NCBI GenBank assembly: GCA_964019335.1
Contig: OZ025734.1
Location: 62,001 to 126,000 of the forward strand
Origin: Diplonema japonicum
Lineage: Eukaryota > Protista > Euglenozoa: Diplonemea
DNA: 64,000 bases
Reading direction: 5' to 3'
The notes beneath the pieces were generated by a model. The model searched no databases and had not been told where the DNA came from. It saw nothing but the letters and a program-made list of their open reading frames with translations. The first letter of the stretch is position 1. Every line of letters starts with the position of its first letter. The translations under genes were made by a program, and so were the position numbers. Shown one piece after another: positions 17,667 through 31,788 of this stretch.

Positions 17667-18024
17667 TTCTTTTTTTTTTCTCTTTTTTTTTTCTTTTCCC
17701 TCCCTTTATTCATCATTCCCCCCCCCCCCCCCCCCCCCTCCTCCGGCTTATAGAAAACTAAAACGGAAAAAAAATCGAAAAGAAGATAATAAAAAAAAAG
17801 AGCTATAAAGGGGTCATAGAAAAAGGAAGCGAGCCGCATCCCCCAAAAATGCCTTTCCCCCCTCACAAAACAGCAAGCTTTTTTTCCCCCCCTTCTTTTT
17901 TGTTTCCCTTTTTTTTTTTTTACCCGTATTCCTAATGAAAGGTAAGGGGAGAAAAGAATAGAGGGGAGAAGTATAAACAACGCACCCTCTTTTTTTTTCT
18001 TTTTTCTTTCAAAAAAAAAAAAAT

Positions 18025-18325
18025 GGGGCTTTGATTGCAACACTAGGTGGCGTTAAGCGTGCAATGAAGCACGAACTACCTACTTGATTACAGGGGGCGC
18101 TCCTCGGCCGAGCAGTGTCCTTAATGCGTGCGGTGTGCTCAACCCTAGCCGGGGCGTCCCGGGTAACCAAGATTCTGCGCTCGTGCAGTTTGCTGCCTGT
18201 TCGTCACCCTGAGTATCTGCGTTACGTTCTTCCACTCAGGCGCTACCGGTGATGACCGACGAGGAGGTCAACAGCGAACAACACATCTGATGTACTTCTT
18301 ATATTTCCATGTTATCCCCACCACC
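18025..18325 (-). mobile_element. Repeat A copy 1: ~300-bp SINE-like element headed by an HDV-like ribozyme
   Basis: Homologous to 24021-24263 and 27662-27917. The 5' end sits at a T-tract-AG junction and no credible ORF is present. Confidence 0.75.
18188..18325 (-). ncRNA. HDV-like self-cleaving ribozyme, family A (apparently complete)
   Basis: P1 GGUGGUG/CAUCACC; long J1/2; P2 GCUGUUG/CAGGCAGC (one bulge); P3 ACC/GGU; L3 UCCUCGUC; P1.1 CC/GG; P4 CCUGAGU/ACUCAGG; J4/2 ACGAA with the putative catalytic C at 18203. Confidence 0.75.
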
Positions 18326-18360
<35 letters not shown>

Positions 18361-18372
18361 AAAAACCCATGC

Positions 18373-19197
18373 TCAGATCATGGTGACTACAGTTTCTTCC
18401 TTGCCCACGCCAGTACCGTTCCAATGTTCGTCAGTGCAGACTGTGATGACAATGGCACTGTTCCCAACCTTGCGGAAAGGAGGGGGAGAGGGCGAAGGAG
18501 AAGGAGAAGGAGAAGGAGAAGGAGAAGGAGAAGGAGAAGGAATAGGAGGTGACACACACACATCGGCATCCATCTGCCGTGTCTCCTGCATTATAGCATC
18601 AGACGAAAAATTTGGCGGCGTAGGTGCGGGGCTAGAAACTGGTGTAGATGCATGCAGAGTAGAACCCTTCCCAGAGTTCTTGACATCCCACAACTTGGAC
18701 TTCATCTGTGGGGTGACGTAGTTGGCATCCTTACATCTATCTCTGAGAGTGCACAGCTCGTCAGTGGGCTGCTTAAACTGGATGTCGAGAGTCCCTCCTG
18801 CATTACGAACTGCCTTGCTGAGGATGGATTCGAAGGCTGTCAGTGCGCTCCCCTCTGGGCGGTTCCGCCTGTCGTCCCTCACCCTGAAGAGGATGACCGG
18901 TTCGGAAGGGTCCTTTGTGGTGATGCAGACCTCGCTGCTGCATGGCGTCTTGTCCGTTGTGTCCAAAGGGTTCAGCTGTTTCATTTTGACCTCCGCCACA
19001 TCTGCCATTTTCACCACTCTTGCAACGTCCCCGTTCACTACGGTCAGCATTAGGTACTGATGGGACATGAGCAGGAGGCGTTTCTGCCTCTTGTTCTTGC
19101 TCGTGATGTGCATGACAACCCATGCCAGGAGGATGGTCTCCGCGTCGCACAGTTGCTTGAAGTCCGGGTGTACCTTTAAGGGCACGTTCGCCAGCAT
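18373..19197 (-). CDS. PH-like (myosin TH1-type) domain protein with a Ser-Pro repeat; paralog of 22436-23344
   Basis: ILLAWVVMHITSKNKRQKRLLLMS...GDVARVV pattern; (SP)n encoded by (GAAGGA)n at ~18493-18540. Confidence 0.7.
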   Translation of the reverse strand: MLANVPLKVHPDFKQLCDAETILLAWVVMHITSKNKRQKRLLLMSHQYLMLTVVNGDVARVVKMADVAEVKMKQLNPLDTTDKTPCSSEVCITTKDPSEPVILFRVRDDRRNRPEGSALTAFESILSKAVRNAGGTLDIQFKQPTDELCTLRDRCKDANYVTPQMKSKLWDVKNSGKGSTLHASTPVSSPAPTPPNFSSDAIMQETRQMDADVCVSPPIPSPSPSPSPSPSPSPSPSPPPFRKVGNSAIVITVCTDEHWNGTGVGKEETVVTMI

Positions 19198-19420
19198 TTC
19201 CCCCTCCCCCCCTTTTTTTTTGTTTGTTGTGTTATACAAGAGGATAAGAAAAAGAAAATCAGATAATCATCCGGGCGCTTGGGTGCCTTAGCGCCCGTCA
19301 CGCACCCTACCTGCCAACTATCACCAACGGGCCTACCCGGTCCGGTGTGCTATCTTTCGATACAAGGCACCTGGGTCTTCATTCAACCCTGTTACCCTGT
19401 TAAGGTTTCTTACCATCGGG

Positions 19421-19462
<42 letters not shown>

Positions 19463-19530
19463 GCTACAAACTAACATTAAGGGACAACGTTGTGTTATCA
19501 AAACGAGAAAAACAAAAAAAAATATATGAG

Positions 19531-21609
19531 TTAAAGGAAGTCTTTGTGAGACGCCCCCTTGTTCTCATCTTCTACCTGCACCTATCCCCTTTCAGCAGCG
19601 GTTTCTCCTCCTTTGGTGGTCTTGCCGGCCTTCTCCCCAGCCTGGCCGCTCTTTCTCTTCGTTCTCTCGCCCATTGTCCTTTCAACGCCTCTAGGTCTTG
19701 CTTGGTCTTCGGTGATGCAAATATCGCCCTCCTGTTCCATCCGATCACCGCCTTTGTCCTCCCGATGGATCGTAGTGTGTGCACCCTTGTGCTCGGCTCA
19801 GCTGGGAAGGCCCTCCTTCCTTTCACCTTCTTCAGTACCCTCCCTAGCTCCCATGTGTGCCAGATCTTCTTCATCAGTCCATGCAATCTCCTCGCTTTCT
19901 GCTGTACTTCTGCGAGATCCCCCAGCTTCCCTCCAAGGGTCTTCCCGGTCACGTTCTCGAAATCCAGTGCCAGCTCCACCGTCGACACTGATGTGTTTCT
20001 GCTGCCTGCATACCAGCGCAGTTGCCGCATCCACCTCAGCACCTCCTTCGTGTACTCACGTAGGACATCCCCTGCCGGTAGCTTGCCGAAGTCCTTGTCC
20101 GACGGTACTGGGTGTTCTTGACCTTGTGTGATCTCCAGCCACTGGTGTGTGTGGTACACCTCCTGCCTCTTCGCTTGTAGGGCTGCGTCCCGCTCCCCCA
20201 CCACCGCCAGCAGGTACCTCTGCGTTCCTTCGAGCCTTTCCCTGACATCCTTCCCTGCTCCCCTTGGCAGGATGCCATGCAGCTTCGTACACGGTTCCAG
20301 CCCCCTGCGCGTCATGCCTTCGTGTTCTTCCCGCTGTTGCACTTCCTTGGCCTTTTCGCACTCCCACAGTGCGTGCTCCAGCATGTTGGGCAGCTGTTGC
20401 TCCTGACCGCAGATGTCGCAGTGTGCCGTCGTGGGTTCGGCCTGCTTAGCCTCTTGCTTCCTCGCCTCCGCAATCAGCCACTTTTCGGTGTCCTGTCCTT
20501 TCTCTTCTTCTTCTTCTTGTTCATCTTCAGCCTCGTCTTCATCCTCGTCTTCTTCTCCTTCCGCCATCGGGATGTGCTCCACCGTGTCCGTGCGCCATCC
20601 CCGTGGGTTGATGTAGAACACTGCCCCCGAGATGATCCTTCGCACGTCCCTTGCTGCAATCGGGTCCGTCACCACCAGCTTCCTCCACAGCGCGTTGGTC
20701 TCCGCTGCTGCCGCAGCTTCCATGCCCCCATGGTGCTCCGTTTGCTCATGATTTCCTGTGCTTCCGCCCGCCTGAGTCGGTCCCTGATGTAGTGCTTGTA
20801 GGGCTCCTTTTCCAGTGCGTGGGTGTCCTTCAGCTGTGCCCAGCTTAACTTGATCTGAGGCAGCCACCTTTCCATCATGATGCCCACCGGTCCCAGCGGT
20901 ATCTTCTTCCCGCTGTACCGTTTGGCAATGGCGTCGCAGCGTGTCCACAGCTTGTCGTCCTTCTTGCAGGCTCTGTATAGGAGCATAAGTGCCCTGTATG
21001 CGGCTGTCATCTGTGGGTGGCTCGTGTGTCCCGGCAGTGTCACGGATAGTACTGTGCCTGGGTTCCTGGTGCAGTACTTCTGCCCCCAGAGCGCGTACGT
21101 GGTCTCCTTCACCAGCGTGGCCATTTGTCCCGTTTTCGGCGGTGAGAATGGGCAGTCGTAGAGGCAGCTCGGTAGGATCGTGCTGCTGATGATCTTCGCC
21201 TTCTGCTGAAAGGACAACGGCGTTGCTCCCAGCCTGCTCGCGTCCCGAGTGCCTCCGCCGTCCTGTCGCCGTTGGTTTGCGGCCTGCCGTCTGTCCGCAG
21301 CTTGGCTCCCAGTACTCCTACAGTCCGTGTCGGCTGCAGTTCCTCGCCTTTCACCTTCACCTCCGGTGTCTTCCTGTTCACTGCAAAGGTCTTCGTCTTC
21401 CTGGTGTTGAGCTTCATCCCCACCTGTTTGCAGAAGGCTTCCACTGCGTCTACGCCTTCCTGCAACGCCGCACCGAGCCGTGCCAAGAGGTATGCATCGT
21501 CCGCGTAAGACAGCGAGCGGACCCCTGTGTCGTTCTCCACCTGCTTCATTAGTACCGCCAACAGCGCGTTGATGAGTACCACTGAAATCGGGCATCCCTG
21601 AAGGATTCC
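19531..21609 (-). mobile_element. 5'-truncated non-LTR retrotransposon (RT C-terminal half plus CCHC zinc finger), frameshifted
   Basis: Begins at GILQGCPIS and continues through SYADD, GMKLNTRKT and VGVLG. Two frame changes follow, then CDICG...LEHALWEC, with a stop at 19572. Direct repeat A9TATATGAG (19514-19530) and A12TATATGAG (21610-21629) is interpreted as a target-site duplication. Confidence 0.9.
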
Positions 21610-21870
21610 AAAAAAAAAAAATATATGAGGAGAGGCGGGGGAGGGGGGATAGAACCCACATTTAAGTGTTTTTTTTTTTTTTTTTTTTTTGTATGTCTTT
21701 TATTTTTTCCTCTTTTAACTGGAGACAATGGGTGGGGGGAGAAAAAAGAATGTGCCTTTTGTTTTCTTAAGAACAACACATTCATTTTTTTTGGGGGGGA
21801 GCTGCTTCGAAAAAAAAAGTAAAAAAAAACCAAACAATTACAACAAAAAATCAAAGGGAAGACAAAAAGA

Positions 21871-21962
21871 AGAACTGGCCGTTGTTTGTACGTGCCGGGT
21901 AAAACCTGGAGAAGTTTGTCAACCCGAAACACGTTGCCAACGTTCCCCTTTTGTTTAGACAA
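21871..21962. repeat. Diverged dispersed repeat C; second copy split between ~25572-25595 and ~25961-26025
   Basis: Shared blocks aactggccgt..tacg, aaacct.gagaag, acgttgccaac.ttcccctttt. Confidence 0.55.
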
Positions 21963-22435
21963 GTCAAAGACTCGTTCTTGCAAAAAAAAAAAAAAAACCC
22001 CCAATGAGAAACATTACTATGAACATAACACACCCACAGATACGAGAAGAAAGAATAGAGAAAAAAGAAATCCTGCTCACAATTCGCTAAATGAAAGGAC
22101 GGAAGATTTCTTTTTTTTTCTTTTGTATTGTTTTGTTTTCTCTTTTTCTTTCTTTTGTTTCCCCCCCTCCCCCTTTTCTTTTTTTCCTTCCTTTTCTTTT
22201 TTTTTTTTGCTTCTTTTGGAAATTGATTGAAAGGGGTGTGTGTGCGTGCGAAAAAAAAAAAAAAAAAAAAAAAGAAGGTAGTGGGGACAACATTTTCCTG
22301 GGCTTATCCTTTCCACAGCGGGTGAACACCCTGACTGTACACAACATAAAAAAAAAAAAAAAAAATCAACCGACTCCCATCTTTTTTCTTTCTTTCTTTC
22401 TTTTTTTTTTTTTTTTTTTTTTTTTCCCCACCCCA

Positions 22436-23344
22436 TCAAACCACGCCCACAGTGATCGTGATGGCCGTGTTCCCGTTCGCCTTATGTTTCGGGTAGGCTC
22501 TCTCTGGCGACCTGAACGAAGGGGGAGAATACGAAGGACCAGGAGGAGAATACGAAGGACCAAGAGGAGAATGGAATGACGGGGGAGAAGTCTCTTCTTT
22601 GGGAGGAGGCGGAGGTGGCGGCAACAGCACCGCCTCTTTCGGCGGCGGGGAAGAATAAACTGGACTCTGCGCTTCTTGCACTTGCTGCCCTTGAACCAAA
22701 GACTCCGCAGGAGAACCAAAATTAGGCACAGCCTGCTGCTCACCAGTCCCAAGCGGAGAAGGAGAAGTAGGTGGGGAAGGTTCCCTACAGGCATTTATAG
22801 TCTGATTAATCTCATCATTAGAAGCCCATCTTTTTTTCTTCTCCAAAGGTGTTACGTAGTCCGTGCGCTTCCTCAAATCCTCTGATGAGCACAACGGTTG
22901 CCCGTTACCTATTTGACTGAACTCACAGTCTCCTTTGGACTGAGCAACACTAGCTTTCAAAATGTCTTCGAATTGTTGAATATTGCTCCCCTCTGGGCGG
23001 TTCCGCCTGTCGTCCCTCACCCTGAAGAGGATGACCGGTTCGGAAGGGTCCTTTGTGGTGATGCAGACCTCGCTGCTGCATGGCGTCTTGTCCGTTGTGT
23101 CCAAAGGGTTCAGCTGTTTAGCCTTCACAGTTGCCAAGTCCTGTAGTTTTATGACCCTTCTAATGTCGCCGTCGGGCATCACAATAAACAGGAACCCTGT
23201 TGATATCAAAACCAGCCTCTTTTGTCGCTTGTTCTTGCTCGAAATCTGCATCACCACCCATGCTAGAACGGTGGTGTCCTTCACCGCTCGCAGTGGTTTT
23301 AGGTACTCCGGGTGGATCTGGACTGGGGTGAGTTGAGCGGGCAT
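22436..23344 (-). CDS. PH-like domain protein with a Pro/Ser-rich tail; paralog of 18373-19197
   Basis: VLAWVVMQISSKNKRQKRLVLIS...GDIRRVI; shares an identical 135-bp block with its paralog. The 3' end may continue through further small exons. Confidence 0.7.
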   Translation of the reverse strand: MPAQLTPVQIHPEYLKPLRAVKDTTVLAWVVMQISSKNKRQKRLVLISTGFLFIVMPDGDIRRVIKLQDLATVKAKQLNPLDTTDKTPCSSEVCITTKDPSEPVILFRVRDDRRNRPEGSNIQQFEDILKASVAQSKGDCEFSQIGNGQPLCSSEDLRKRTDYVTPLEKKKRWASNDEINQTINACREPSPPTSPSPLGTGEQQAVPNFGSPAESLVQGQQVQEAQSPVYSSPPPKEAVLLPPPPPPPKEETSPPSFHSPLGPSYSPPGPSYSPPSFRSPERAYPKHKANGNTAITITVGVV

Positions 23345-23517
23345 TACTTTTTTTTTTTTTTTTTTTCTTTTTTTTTTTCCCCCCGCCCCCTTCCCTCCCC
23401 CCCCCACCGCCCCCTCTAGTTTGTTGGTGACATGGTTTCAAAAAAAAAAAAAAAAAAGAAAATGAGATGGGAGGAATGGGAAAAAAAAAAAAGAGGGGGA
23501 AAAAAATGGAGTTTGAG

Positions 23518-23551
23518 TTAAAAGGAGGTCTTTGTGAGACACCCTCCCTTT
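23518..23551 (-). mobile_element. Isolated 3'-terminal stem-loop of the LINE family
   Basis: AAAGGGAGGGTGTCTCACAAAGACCTCCTTTTAA followed by CTCA, matching the LINE 3' end GGGGGCGTCTCACAAAGACTTCCTTTAA followed by CTCA. Confidence 0.7.
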
Positions 23552-23981
23552 CTCTATTGTAATCAGAGAAGAAAAAAAAAAAAAAAAAAGAAGGAAGAAA
23601 AAAAAAAGTCTTGAAAGATTGATATGAGATCTTCGCGCAGGGAGGGGGGGTGGACAACGGTTTGCAGTGTCTGTCACTCTCAATGGATAAAACAAAAGTG
23701 CCGACACTTTTTTTTTTTTTTTTCCTTTCCCATTGCCCCGCTAATGGACTCTTTGTTTCTTTAAAAACAAAAACAAAAAAATAAAAAAGAAACGAAAAAA
23801 CCTGATCCATCCCAGGTAGTGTGTGTAACCCATCCTTTAGGAACATGCTCTGTATATATGAGAGGCAAAAAAAGGAGAAAAAAGAGAAAAGAGCACAAAA
23901 AAAAAAAAAAAAAGGTTTTTTCTTTTTGAGCTGCCGAGAGAGGAAGGAGAAAGGGAAGAAGAAGAAAAAAAAAAATATGAG

Positions 23982-24300
23982 TTAAAAGATGTCTTTGTGA
24001 GACCTTTGTATTAAAAAAAAGGGGGGCTTTGATTGCAACATTAAGTGGCGTTAAGTGTGCAACGAAGGATGAAGCTATCTACTTGATTACAGGGGGCGCA
24101 CCTCGGCCGAGCAGTAGCTTCTTCCTTAATGCGTGCGGTGTGCAACTCAACCCTAGCCGGGGCGACCGGGTAATTATGTGCTACCGGTGATGACCGACGA
24201 GGAGGTCAACAGCGAACAACACATCTGATGTACTTCTTATATTTCCATGCTACCCCTACCACCAATAAAGTACAGAATCTGTAGCTTTAGAATCGTTGGT
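23982..24300 (-). mobile_element. Repeat A copy 2: retroposed unit of SL exon + ribozyme head (P4/J4/2 deleted) + body + LINE 3' tail
   Basis: SL at 24263-24300, repeat A body at 24021-24263, and tail GGTCTCACAAAGACATCTTTTAA at 23982-24004. Flanks are A11TATGAG and A17GAG. Confidence 0.8.
24263..24300 (-). other. Spliced-leader (mini-exon) sequence, diplonemid type
   Basis: ACCAACGATTCTAAAGCTACAGATTCTGTACTTTATTG closely matches the Diplonema SL as I recall it (AACCAACGATTTAAAAGCTACAGTTTCTGTACTTTATTG), including the 3' end TCTGTACTTTATTG shared with kinetoplastids. Confidence 0.9.
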
Positions 24301-27178: not shown

Positions 27179-27661
27179 TTAGTATTACTACTGTAAACAA
27201 AAAAAAAAAAAAAAAAACCAAGAAAATCGAATCACAGGGGAAGAAAAACAAAAACAAAAATTCCTCTAGAAAAAAAAGTGGGGGGGGGGAATAGATACAC
27301 TCCTAAAAACGCGGGGAAAAAAAAATCACAAAATCATTCTTGTGGGCAAAAAAAGAAAAAAAAAAAGAGGTGAGGTGACAAGGGGAACAATTTCCTCCCT
27401 CATCTTCATGTACCCCTCTTCTGCAGGACAGCTTGAGATAATAAAATAATTTAAAGTCCAAAGTTGGTTTTTTTTTAAAATCGAAAAAAAAAAAAAAAAA
27501 AAAAAAGTCCTATGATTTTCCTATTCCCAAATCCTTGTATACAGTATTGCGTTTTTTTTCTTTTTTCTTTTTCCTCCTCCCCCTTTTCTTTTCTTGTTCA
27601 ATTTTACGGAGAGGGCCGAAGAAGGCCTCGAGTGACATTTTTTTTTTTTTTTGAATAAATA

Positions 27662-27917
27662 GGGGCCTTGATTGCGACTCTAAGTGGCGTTAAGTGTGCA
27701 ACGAAGGATGAAGCTATCTACTTGATTACAGGGGGCGCACCTCGGCCGAGGTGTAGCTTCTTCTGCGTTCCGCGTCGTGTGCGTGCGGTGTGCAACTCAA
27801 CCCTGGGGCCTGTTCGTCACCCTGAGCATCTGCAATATGTTCTTCCACTCGGGCGCTACCGGTGATGAGGTCAACACATCTGATGTACTTCTTTATATTT
27901 CCATGTTATCCACCACC
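27662..27917 (-). mobile_element. Repeat A copy 3 (ribozyme L3 region deleted)
   Basis: Homologous to 18025-18325; begins TTATAG|GTGGTG; has internal deletions different from those of copy 2. Confidence 0.75.
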
Positions 27918-31568: not shown

Positions 31569-31644
31569 GTTTCCCTTTCGCTTGTGTTTCTCCAAACCAC
31601 AATTACCAGGAACCACCACAGGGAGGTTGGAAACATTGGTCCCC
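31569..31644 (-). ncRNA. HDV-like self-cleaving ribozyme, family B (complete, 76 nt)
   Basis: P1 GGGGACC/GGUUCCU with a G1-U wobble; P2 GUUUCC/GGAAAC; P3 ACC/GGU; L3 UCCCUGU; P1.1 CC/GG; P4 UUGU(G)GUUU-GGAG-AAACACAA; J4/2 GCGAA with the putative catalytic C at 31580. Confidence 0.85.
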
Positions 31645-31788
31645 CAAAAAAAAAAAACTCAAAGTGCAGGACAAACCCCCTCATGGAGGGCCGCCCTTGG
31701 GTGGGTTGGGGGGGGCTATCTATTTATACTCCTTCTGGAGCATTGCTTTCGTTCCAATCGAGGCCTCGAGCAAAAAAAAAAAAAAATT

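What the first reader, a model, noticed from the sequence alone, without database searches (positions are those of the whole stretch)
18188..18330. HDV-like ribozyme whose cleavage site lies inside the trans-splice acceptor AG
Seen: a full nested double-pseudoknot (P1 GGUGGUG/CAUCACC, P3 ACC/GGU, P1.1, P4, ACGAA, P2) with an 8-nt L3 shared by copies 1 and 2. Copies 1 and 3 begin with a U-tract then AG|GUGGUG; copy 2 has the SL joined at exactly that AG. Known: HDV-like ribozymes cut immediately 5' of the first P1 base. Inference: cleavage falls between the A and G of the acceptor and destroys it. After trans-splicing the last G of the SL rebuilds P1, so the ribozyme could remove the capped leader. 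Self-cleavage and trans-splicing would therefore compete at one nucleotide. The site is also only ~48 nt after the stop codon of the 18373 gene, so it could set that mRNA's 3' end.
Basis: partly seen in the sequence, partly recalled or inferred. Interest (0 to 1): 0.9.

Follow-up and report, generated by a model that had tools for sequence, protein, structure and literature searches.

The report
Ribozyme-headed SINE abutting a splice acceptor
This is the self-cutting (HDV-type) RNA head of a short jumping element present at least 745 times in a protist genome. It sits so close to a splice signal that a few copies still carry the cell's spliced leader joined at the cut site; the element type is known, the leader junction is a modestly new detail.

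Summary
On the minus strand, 18325→18188 has every element of an HDV-like double pseudoknot, with catalytic C at 18203. All 66 distinct non-leader copies examined start exactly at G1, the predicted cleavage site.

The U-tract and the A of the "AG" are flanking target DNA, not element. Copies sit behind T-runs, and position −1 is A in 53 of 66.

Genome-wide, 12 copies carry the 38-nt spliced leader: 8 joined at G2, 4 at G1, none further upstream. The G−1 junction is over-represented, and three of its four copies have intact ribozymes. That fits the published HDV preference U>C>A>G at −1. Leader-bearing copies are not enriched for broken ribozymes.

Not shown:
- Covariation within the family is absent, but the copies are too alike to test it.
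- No RNA run was available, so cleavage, competition with trans-splicing and any role in the upstream mRNA's 3' end stay inferred.

HDV-like ribozymes heading retroposons are known in trypanosomatids. This scan had already found this family elsewhere in the same genome.

The parts
18329..18359 (-). T-run (31 T) in the flank upstream of the element, followed by AGA (18328-18326). This is target DNA, not element. With G1 it forms a polypyrimidine + AG acceptor-like signal.
   Evidence: Upstream flanks differ between copies but are T-rich: 68% T at -25..-4 against 29% background.
18319..18325 (-). P1 5' strand GGUGGUG. G1 = 18325 is the predicted cleavage site (5' of G1) and the first base of the repeat.
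   Evidence: 66 of 66 non-leader copies start at G1.
18280..18318 (-). J1/2 insertion (positions 8-46). It probably forms a peripheral hairpin (about 9-18 with 41-50) with a variable loop.
   Evidence: The MFE and centroid folds show the hairpin. Subfamily substitutions and insertions fall in its loop.
18269..18279 (-). P2 5' strand.
   Evidence: 98.4% of cells paired.
18246..18268 (-). Catalytic core: P3 ACC, L3 UCCUCGUC, P3' GGU, P1 3' strand CAUCACC, and GG of P1.1.
   Evidence: The Rfam RF00094 alignment places CCUCCUCGUCGG on the HDV consensus CCUCCuCGcUGG.
18208..18240 (-). P4 hairpin (CCUGAGU ... ACUCAGG). This copy has two private changes that turn a C.A and a U.G of the family consensus into U-A pairs.
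18200..18207 (-). J4/2 with the predicted catalytic C at 18203 (ACGAA).
   Evidence: C at position 123. CGAA aligns to J4/2 of the HDV model.
18188..18199 (-). P2 3' strand CAGGCAGCAAAC.
   Evidence: The 26-mer spanning J4/2 and P2' occurs 745 times in the genome at up to 2 mismatches.
18024..18187 (-). Non-coding body and 3' end of the SINE-like copy, ending ...CAAUCAAAGCCCCA. It carries a 24-nt internal deletion relative to the 326-nt family consensus.
   Evidence: length 302.
18011..18023 (-). T-run (13 T) directly after the element: target-site duplication and/or U-tail. There is no poly(A).
23975..24300 (-). Copy 2: 38-nt spliced leader (24300-24263) joined to GUGGUA... at 24262. It belongs to an older subfamily, has P4/J4/2/P2' deleted, and ends in the tail GTCTCACAAAGAC...AACTCATAT.
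27661..27917 (-). Copy 3: G1 at 27917 behind ...UUAUUAUA. Part of P2, plus P3 and L3, are deleted, so the ribozyme is dead.

Best explanation
Window 18325->18024 (minus strand) is one copy of a short non-coding retroposon (SINE-like; consensus 326 nt; at least 745 copies). Its first ~138 nt fold as an HDV-like self-cleaving ribozyme.

Proposed mechanism:
1. The element lies in the same orientation as the neighbouring ORFs and is probably transcribed as part of long host transcripts (inferred).
2. The ribozyme cuts 5' of G1 (18325). This frees an element RNA that starts exactly at G1 and still carries the whole ribozyme (inferred from the fold and from the copies' ends).
3. A partner reverse transcriptase copies this RNA into T-runs without a poly(A) tail. 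New copies therefore begin at G1 and are flanked by T-runs (the ends are shown, the enzyme is inferred).
4. Because the landing site is a T-run usually followed by A, most copies carry a pyrimidine tract + A|G1 that looks like a 3' splice acceptor.
5. Now and then the 38-nt spliced leader is trans-spliced there. Such RNAs are also retro-copied, leaving 12 leader-bearing fossils joined at G2 (8) or G1 (4).
6. After splicing at A(-1)G1, the leader's last G restores P1 with U at -1, the best HDV substrate, so most such RNAs would lose the leader again. Junctions with G at -1, the worst substrate, keep it. This last step is the least certain.
For: Fold:
- All elements are present in canonical order.
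- 95.5% of pair cells are standard pairs across 31 distinct copies, against 21-52% when the partners are slid.
- L3 and J4/2 align to the Rfam HDV model.

Boundary:
- 30 full copies diverge immediately upstream of GGTGGTG.
- In an unbiased sample, 24 of 30 copies start there and 3 more carry the leader.
- 66 of 66 distinct non-leader copies have G1.
- The chance that a descriptor hit falls on that exact base is about 7e-6.

Same architecture with other sequence:
- A second family (96 copies) has a compact HDV-like head at 31644->31569 with different P1 and P2 and the same P3, GG and CGAA.
- That head scores 29.7 bits against RF00094, E 0.0046.

Selection on master copies:
- Shared non-CpG substitutions hit 1 of 58 core sites against 23 of 268 other sites, one-sided p 0.05.

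Flanks:
- T-rich on both sides, with duplications that include non-T bases in several copies such as L017, L015, L023, L030 and L066.

Leader fossils:
- 12 copies, joined only at G1 or G2 and never further upstream.
- Two have 5'-truncated leaders, as expected of incomplete reverse transcription.
- G(-1) junctions are over-represented, p 7e-4, and 3 of the 4 have intact ribozymes.
- This matches U>C>A>G at -1 in the HDV ribozyme (PMC1874588).

Precedent: L1Tc, NARTc and SIDER ribozymes (PMC3185411, PMC4035085).
Against: - There is no direct evidence of cleavage. No RNA run was on record and only contigs could be laid.
- No compensatory change occurs within the family.
- The Rfam score is far below threshold: 14.6 against 50 bits.
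- The nested MFE is unremarkable, z = 0.33.
- Leader-bearing copies with U at -1 include three with length-intact cores (L091, L092, L093).
- Gross ribozyme lesions are no more common among leader-bearing copies (4 of 12) than in the background (about 27 of 96). Efficient removal of the leader is therefore not shown.
- The four G(-1) copies could descend from one source copy, which would weaken the p-value.
- The A at -1 is only sometimes part of a visible target duplication. Its origin is unresolved.
Confidence: 0.8

Rival explanations
1. Cleavage and trans-splicing are a regulated competition at one phosphodiester. The ribozyme also serves the host by setting the 3' end of the upstream ORF's mRNA (stop codon at 18373) and by removing the capped leader.
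For: - Geometry is right: G1 lies 48 nt after the stop codon.
- A(-1)G1 follows a 31-T tract.
- Leader fossils sit at G1/G2.
- The -1 identity pattern fits (PMC1874588).
- SIDER2 elements in Leishmania 3' UTRs are reported to destabilise mRNAs by cleavage at the ribozyme signature (as cited in PMC4035085).
Against: - The acceptor is half flank and differs between copies, so nothing marks this copy as domesticated.
- Copy 1 has an AG at -3/-2, upstream of the one at the cut site.
- The upstream ORF has no homologues or domains.
- No RNA data exist.
- There is no enrichment of dead ribozymes among leader-bearing copies.
Confidence: 0.2
2. The leader-element junctions were not made by trans-splicing at the flank AG. 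Instead the reverse transcriptase jumped templates, from the 5' end of an already cleaved element RNA (G1) to the 3' end of a free leader exon (...UUAUUG-3'OH, the first-step intermediate of trans-splicing), with or without 1 nt of overlap.
For: - Junctions occur only at G1 or with a one-G overlap, never with flank bases between.
- G1 junctions are far commoner than AG(-2,-1) flanks would predict.
- Several leader-bearing copies have intact ribozymes.
- End-to-end template jumping is an established property of non-LTR reverse transcriptases (my own knowledge, not checked here).
Against: - The free leader exon is a rare, short-lived species.
- The genome holds 227 dispersed leader copies fused to many unrelated sequences, as expected of retro-copied trans-spliced RNAs in general.
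- The flanks supply an excellent pyrimidine tract + AG.
Confidence: 0.1
3. The fold is an inactive relic or a coincidence. The uniform 5' end at G1 comes from transcription initiation: an internal promoter as in Pr77, or RNA polymerase III with the downstream T-run as terminator.
For: - The T-run right after the element would terminate Pol III.
- L1Tc combines a promoter and a ribozyme in the same 77 nt (PMC3383444).
- There is no covariation and no Rfam hit above threshold.
Against: - No tRNA, 7SL or 5S similarity was found.
- The only A-box-like word lies about 85 nt inside the element (my reading of the sequence), so it does not explain a start at G1.
- The full set of HDV core features at the exact boundary is very unlikely by chance.
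- A second, unrelated family in the same genome has the same architecture at its head.
- Leader-bearing copies show that Pol II read-through RNA is used as template.
Confidence: 0.08

Closest known systems
L1TcRz / Pr77 hallmark of trypanosomatid L1Tc, NARTc, ingi/RIME and SIDER elements (PMC3185411, PMC3383444, PMC4035085)
   Same: - HDV-like ribozyme occupying the first nucleotides of LINE and SINE-like retroposons in organisms with spliced-leader trans-splicing.
- Cleaves 5' of +1.
- Frees element RNA from polycistronic transcripts.
- Is carried into each new copy.
   Different: - The ribozyme here is about 138 nt with a J1/2 hairpin, against 77-126 nt.
- Its L3 and J4/2 are close to HDV itself.
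- Copies have no poly(A) tail and sit in T-runs.
- Promoter activity is unknown.
- The authors propose that L1Tc mRNAs lack the leader, whereas here 12 copies carry a leader joined at +1/+2.
- Sequence homology to Pr77 was not tested.
R2 and other non-LTR retrotransposon HDV-like ribozymes, including the R2-derived SIDE elements (PMC3774820, PMC3414825)
   Same: - A 5' ribozyme processes a host co-transcript at or near the element's 5' junction.
- Non-autonomous short derivatives keep the ribozyme head.
- Large J1/2 regions occur.
   Different: - R2 is specific for a 28S rDNA site.
- This family is dispersed, targets T-runs, and lives in a trans-splicing host.
Genomic HDV ribozyme (Rfam RF00094)
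   Same: - Double-pseudoknot order of helices.
- 7-bp P1, 3-bp P3 and 8-nt L3 (UCCUCGUC here against UCCUCGCU).
- GG for P1.1 and C-G-A-A in J4/2.
- The published -1 preference U>C>A>G (PMC1874588) fits the leader-retention pattern.
   Different: - G1-C rather than G1.U at the base of P1.
- A 39-nt J1/2 insertion and a longer P2 with a bulge.
- The score is only 14.6 bits against a gathering score of 50.
- The context is a cellular retroposon, not a viroid-like virus.
Leader-bearing retrocopies: relict spliced leaders in dinoflagellate genes (my own knowledge), and leader-headed LINE copies noted elsewhere in this genome by the scan
   Same: A complete or 5'-truncated leader sits at the 5' end of a retro-copied sequence, as a fossil of a trans-spliced RNA.
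   Different: Here the leader is joined within one nucleotide of a ribozyme cleavage site, so the ribozyme could in principle remove it again.

Membership tests
HDV-like self-cleaving ribozymes | Nested double pseudoknot with P1, P1.1, P2, P3 and P4 in canonical order | tested here: met
   All five helices can be drawn on copy 1 and on the family consensus. 95.5% of pair cells are standard pairs in 31 distinct copies, against 21-52% for slid partners.
HDV-like self-cleaving ribozymes | 7-bp P1 whose first base is the nucleotide 3' of the scissile bond | tested here: met
   GGUGGUG/CAUCACC. G1 is also the first base of the repeat in 66 of 66 copies.
HDV-like self-cleaving ribozymes | 3-bp P3 closed by a 7-8-nt L3 that supplies two C for P1.1 and the U...G of the metal-binding wobble | tested here: met
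   ACC-UCCUCGUC-GGU followed by P1' and GG. It aligns to the HDV consensus CCUCCuCGcUGG. This is met at sequence level only.
HDV-like self-cleaving ribozymes | Catalytic C in J4/2 followed by purine-A, directly before the P2 3' strand | tested here: met
   ACGAA with C at 18203, then CAGGCAGCAAAC.
HDV-like self-cleaving ribozymes | Covariation supporting the helices | tested here: inconclusive
   There are 0 pairs with changes on both sides within the family, because the copies are too alike. A second family in the window has different P1 and P2 sequences in the same architecture.
HDV-like self-cleaving ribozymes | Match to a curated Rfam model at the gathering score | tested here: not met
   There is no hit at gathering score. 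RF00094 gives 14.6 bits, E 5.3, and uses the wrong P1 5' strand because of the J1/2 insertion. The Rfam HDV models are narrow, so I take this as a limit of the models rather than as exclusion.
HDV-like self-cleaving ribozymes | Mg2+-dependent self-cleavage giving 5'-OH and 2',3'-cyclic phosphate | not testable with these tools
   This needs an in vitro transcription assay. No RNA reads were available.
Non-autonomous non-LTR retroposon (SINE-like) | Short, non-coding, high copy number, dispersed, with defined ends and target duplications | tested here: met
   745 hits for the internal 26-mer and 619 for the 5' 24-mer. The consensus is 326 nt. Duplications that include non-T bases occur in several copies.
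Non-autonomous non-LTR retroposon (SINE-like) | 3' end shared with an autonomous partner LINE | tested here: inconclusive
   Older subfamily copies, and window copy 2, end in ...CCTTTAACTCATAT. So does the LINE-like element at 19514-24004. That element's ORFs gave no Pfam RT hit. The partner of the young 326-nt subfamily was not identified.
Non-autonomous non-LTR retroposon (SINE-like) | Pol III head derived from tRNA, 7SL or 5S (classical SINE) | tested here: not met
   No tRNA was found and no Rfam family. The head is a ribozyme, as in NARTc- or SIDE-type elements.
Pr77 / L1TcRz hallmark (trypanosomatid L1Tc/ingi clade) | Sequence similarity to the 77-79-nt signature | not tested
Pr77 / L1TcRz hallmark (trypanosomatid L1Tc/ingi clade) | Poly(A)-tailed element | tested here: not met
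   Copies end ...GCCCCA followed by a T-run, with no A-tail.

The most novel reading that the evidence does not exclude
Each insertion behind a T-run + A builds its own trans-splice acceptor across the ribozyme's scissile bond. An element RNA can then either be cut (5'-OH, uncapped) or receive the capped leader. The leader's terminal G restores P1 with the optimal U(-1), so the ribozyme works as a self-contained 'de-capping' device. The -1 base (U against G) would decide whether the leader survives.
Probability: 0.25. Interest if true: 0.65.

Novelty: new member of a known kind. Interest (0 to 1): 0.42.

Why it matters
HDV-like ribozymes heading retroposons are established in insects and trypanosomatids. 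This case extends them to another euglenozoan lineage, with an HDV-near core.

It also gives a rare genomic record of two RNA-processing reactions, self-cleavage and spliced-leader addition, acting within one nucleotide of each other. If the -1 rule holds, the 12 leader-bearing copies are a natural experiment indicating that the ribozyme works in vivo. The system would also let one test how uncapped 5'-OH RNA and leader-capped RNA fare as retrotransposition templates.

For annotation, at least 745 such heads create acceptor-like signals and potential cleavage sites between genes.

Tried and rejected
- **Rfam, whole window at gathering score and 1.5 kb at E up to 10:** no ribozyme hit. Only a 166-nt search gave a weak RF00094 match.
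- **My structural descriptor:** too permissive on its own, with 0.88 hits per shuffled window. I used it only together with the repeat boundary.
- **Covariation within the family:** no power.
- **Nested MFE fold:** no signal, z 0.33.
- **RNA evidence:** no RNA run on record, and contigs cannot show ends.
- **Are leader-bearing copies enriched for dead ribozymes?** This looked striking on the first four copies. It failed against a background estimated from 96 copies chosen by their 5' end.
- **Leader-ribozyme base pairing as an inhibitor of cleavage:** the duplex energy is no better than for shuffled leaders.
- **tRNA-derived head:** none found.
- **Homologues and domains of the flanking ORFs and of the neighbouring LINE-like ORFs:** none found.
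- **Leader fusions in the second ribozyme family:** none in 96 copies, which is uninformative at a 1.6% rate.

Full report
**What is there**

Numbering from G1 = 18325, it contains:
- P1: GGUGGUG (positions 1-7) with CAUCACC (72-78).
- P3: ACC/GGU (58-60 with 69-71), closing the 8-nt L3 UCCUCGUC.
- P1.1: GG (79-80), able to pair with L3 C62 and C63.
- P4: CCUGAGU/ACUCAGG (86-92 with 112-118).
- J4/2: ACGAA, with the C at position 123 = window 18203.
- P2: 10 bp between 47-57 and 127-138, with one bulge and one mismatch.
- J1/2: a 39-nt insertion. ViennaRNA folds it as a hairpin (9-18 with 41-50).

This is the canonical order of an HDV-like double pseudoknot. A 166-nt Rfam search aligns CCUCCUCGUCGG...GG...CGAA to the HDV model, but only at 14.6 bits, because the insertion hides the true P1 strand. 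Searches of the whole window or of 1.5 kb gave no ribozyme hit.

**It is the head of a retroposon**

A search of the window's own 62.5-Mb genome with 18330->18020 returned about 40 near-full-length matches out of 1414 candidates.
- The J4/2-P2' 26-mer occurs 745 times at up to 2 mismatches.
- The 24-mer starting at G2 occurs 619 times.
- Aligned copies are alike from GGTGGTG to ...CAATCAAAGCCCCA (consensus 326 nt; the window copy is 302 nt) and unrelated outside.
- In a sample chosen by the internal 26-mer, 24 of 30 copies start at G1, 3 carry a spliced leader and 3 are rearranged.
- Among 72 distinct 5' junctions, 6 carry the leader. All 66 others have G at +1.

My descriptor alone is weak: it gives 0.88 hits per shuffled 64 kb, or about 7e-6 per position. 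The statistically meaningful fact is that its P1 start coincides with an independently defined repeat boundary.

A second, unrelated family (96 copies) has a compact head at 31644->31569. It uses other P1 and P2 sequences but the same P3, GG and CGAA. It scores 29.7 bits (E 0.0046) against RF00094 and 22.4 bits against RF02682. The architecture therefore recurs at retroposon heads in this genome.

**Conservation**

Within the family there is no compensatory change, because the copies are young. Substitutions shared by four or more copies and not explained by CpG decay fall on 1 of 58 core sites. That one site is L3 position 4, which I recall to be variable in HDV-like ribozymes. The figure elsewhere is 23 of 268 sites (one-sided p 0.05). 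Within the ribozyme, the shared variants sit in the J1/2 loop and at the P4 tip. This suggests that amplifying lineages kept the core, but the evidence is weak.

**Flanks**

- Upstream flanks are 68% T at -25..-4, against 29% background.
- Position -1 is A in 53 of 66 copies, with 0-7 A before G1.
- AG at -2/-1 occurs in 2 of 66 copies.
- Downstream, a T-run follows ...GCCCCA directly, and there is no poly(A).
- In several copies (L017, L015, L023, L030, L066, L012, L021) the duplication includes the non-T bases, so the T-run plus A is at least partly target sequence. In others the A is not repeated downstream, and its origin is open.

The "U-tract + AG" is therefore half flank and half element. 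In copy 1 the flank reads ...T31-AGA|G, which puts a further AG at -3/-2.

**Spliced leader**

The 38-nt sequence ACCAACGATTCTAAAGCTACAGTTTCTGTACTTTATTG behaves as a leader. Its last 23 nt occur 227 times, dispersed. Among the 30 places examined they are joined at the same ...TTATTG end to many unrelated sequences. A 39-nt leader is reported for Diplonema (PMC10161547). Earlier notes of this scan call the organism diplonemid-like, which I did not verify.

Exactly 12 copies of this family carry the leader: 8 as leader+GTGGT and 4 as leader+GGTGGT. None has 1-30 flank bases between leader and G1. Two have 5'-truncated leaders, as expected of incomplete reverse transcription.

Leader+GTGGT is what splicing at A(-1)G(+1) would give.

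**Does the ribozyme act on such RNAs?**

- The first four leader-bearing copies I saw had independent deletions in the core.
- The full set has gross lesions in 4 of 12 copies. The background, estimated from 96 copies chosen by their 5' end, is about 27 of 96. That is no enrichment.
- G(-1) junctions make up 4 of 12 fusions, although AG(-2,-1) flanks are 2 of 55 usable acceptors (p 7e-4).
- Three of those four copies (L026, L050, L094) have intact ribozymes.
- The genomic HDV ribozyme cleaves in the order U-1 > C-1 > A-1 > G-1, with a more than 25-fold range (PMC1874588). Retention of the leader mainly where -1 is G is what an active ribozyme would produce.

Caveats: n is small, the four copies may share one source, and reverse-transcriptase template jumping from a cleaved G1 end to a free leader exon would give the same junctions.

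**RNA evidence**

No run on record as RNA holds the stretch, and the runs laid were contigs, which cannot show ends. Cleavage, competition with trans-splicing and any effect on the upstream ORF remain inferred. That ORF (18373-19239) has its stop 48 nt before G1 and no homologue or domain.

**Comparison with known systems**

HDV-like ribozymes at +1 of LINEs and their short derivatives are established for R2 and for trypanosomatid L1Tc, NARTc and SIDER (PMC3185411, PMC4035085, PMC3774820). There they are proposed to free element RNA from polycistronic transcripts, and L1Tc mRNAs are proposed to lack the leader (PMC3383444).

This family works in the same way. It differs in sequence, in its J1/2 hairpin, in having T-run flanks without an A-tail, and in leaving leader-bearing fossils at +1/+2. 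Older subfamily copies, including window copy 2, end in ...CCTTTAACTCATAT, which is also the 3' end of the LINE-like element at 19514-24004.

**Earlier notes of this scan**

The scan had already described this ~320-nt ribozyme-headed family, its T-run insertion and leader-headed LINE copies on other pieces of the same genome. My results agree with those notes. They add the genome-wide census of leader junctions and the -1 pattern.

**Verdict**

- This is a new member of a known kind, with a modestly new and testable twist.

Noticed in passing
window 31569-31645 (minus): A compact HDV-like ribozyme (GGGGACC ... ACC-UCCCUGU-GGU-GGUUCCU-GG ... CGAA-(A)GGGAAAC) lies directly behind a T-run. It heads a separate family of 96 copies. 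RF00094 gives 29.7 bits (E 0.0046) and RF02682 gives 22.4 bits. No leader-fused copies were found.
   Followed up: partly
G000 genome-wide; loci L031-L060: The last 23 nt of the spliced leader occur 227 times, dispersed, often near contig ends. They are joined at ...TTATTG to at least 8 unrelated downstream sequences, for example GTCGTTCGTGTTCTGCTGG... and GTACCCAATCTGATCC... Leader-headed retrocopies seem common in this genome.
   Followed up: partly
family positions 63-80 (window 18263-18246 in copy 1); e.g. L032, L036, L073, L089, window copy 3: Independent deletions recur across L3, P3' and P1' (4-6 of 73 copies at each position). This may reflect reverse transcriptase skipping a stable structure, or slippage between short repeats.
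   Followed up: no
The motif GTCTCACAAAGAC...AACTCATAT stands both at 24003-23975 and near 19553-19518.
   Followed up: partly
5' junctions of 66 copies (loci L001-L116): Between the upstream T-run and G1 there are 0-7 A (one A is commonest). In many copies these A are not repeated after the downstream T-run, so they may be untemplated additions rather than target sequence.
   Followed up: partly
G000 C1:652-659 kb, C2:57-58 kb, C4:642-648 kb, C5:739-747 kb (L098, L099, L102, L105, L108, L113): Clusters of copies share the same upstream flank (AAC[CT]TT[AT]ATCTTCTTTTTCA). Most also share one deletion that removes P4 and the catalytic C. They look like parts of a larger duplicated or tandem unit rather than separate insertions.
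   Followed up: no
window 18208-18240 (minus): Copy 1 differs from the family consensus by two private transitions in P4. Both turn a non-Watson-Crick position (C.A, U.G) into U-A. One of them is at a CpG.
   Followed up: no
window 18373-19239 (minus): This ORF of 288 codons has an (SP)n run encoded by the (GGAGAA)n repeat at about 18480-18550. It has no homologue and no Pfam family. Contigs of two runs of other organisms (share 0.05-0.16) cover parts of it with few differences.
   Followed up: partly
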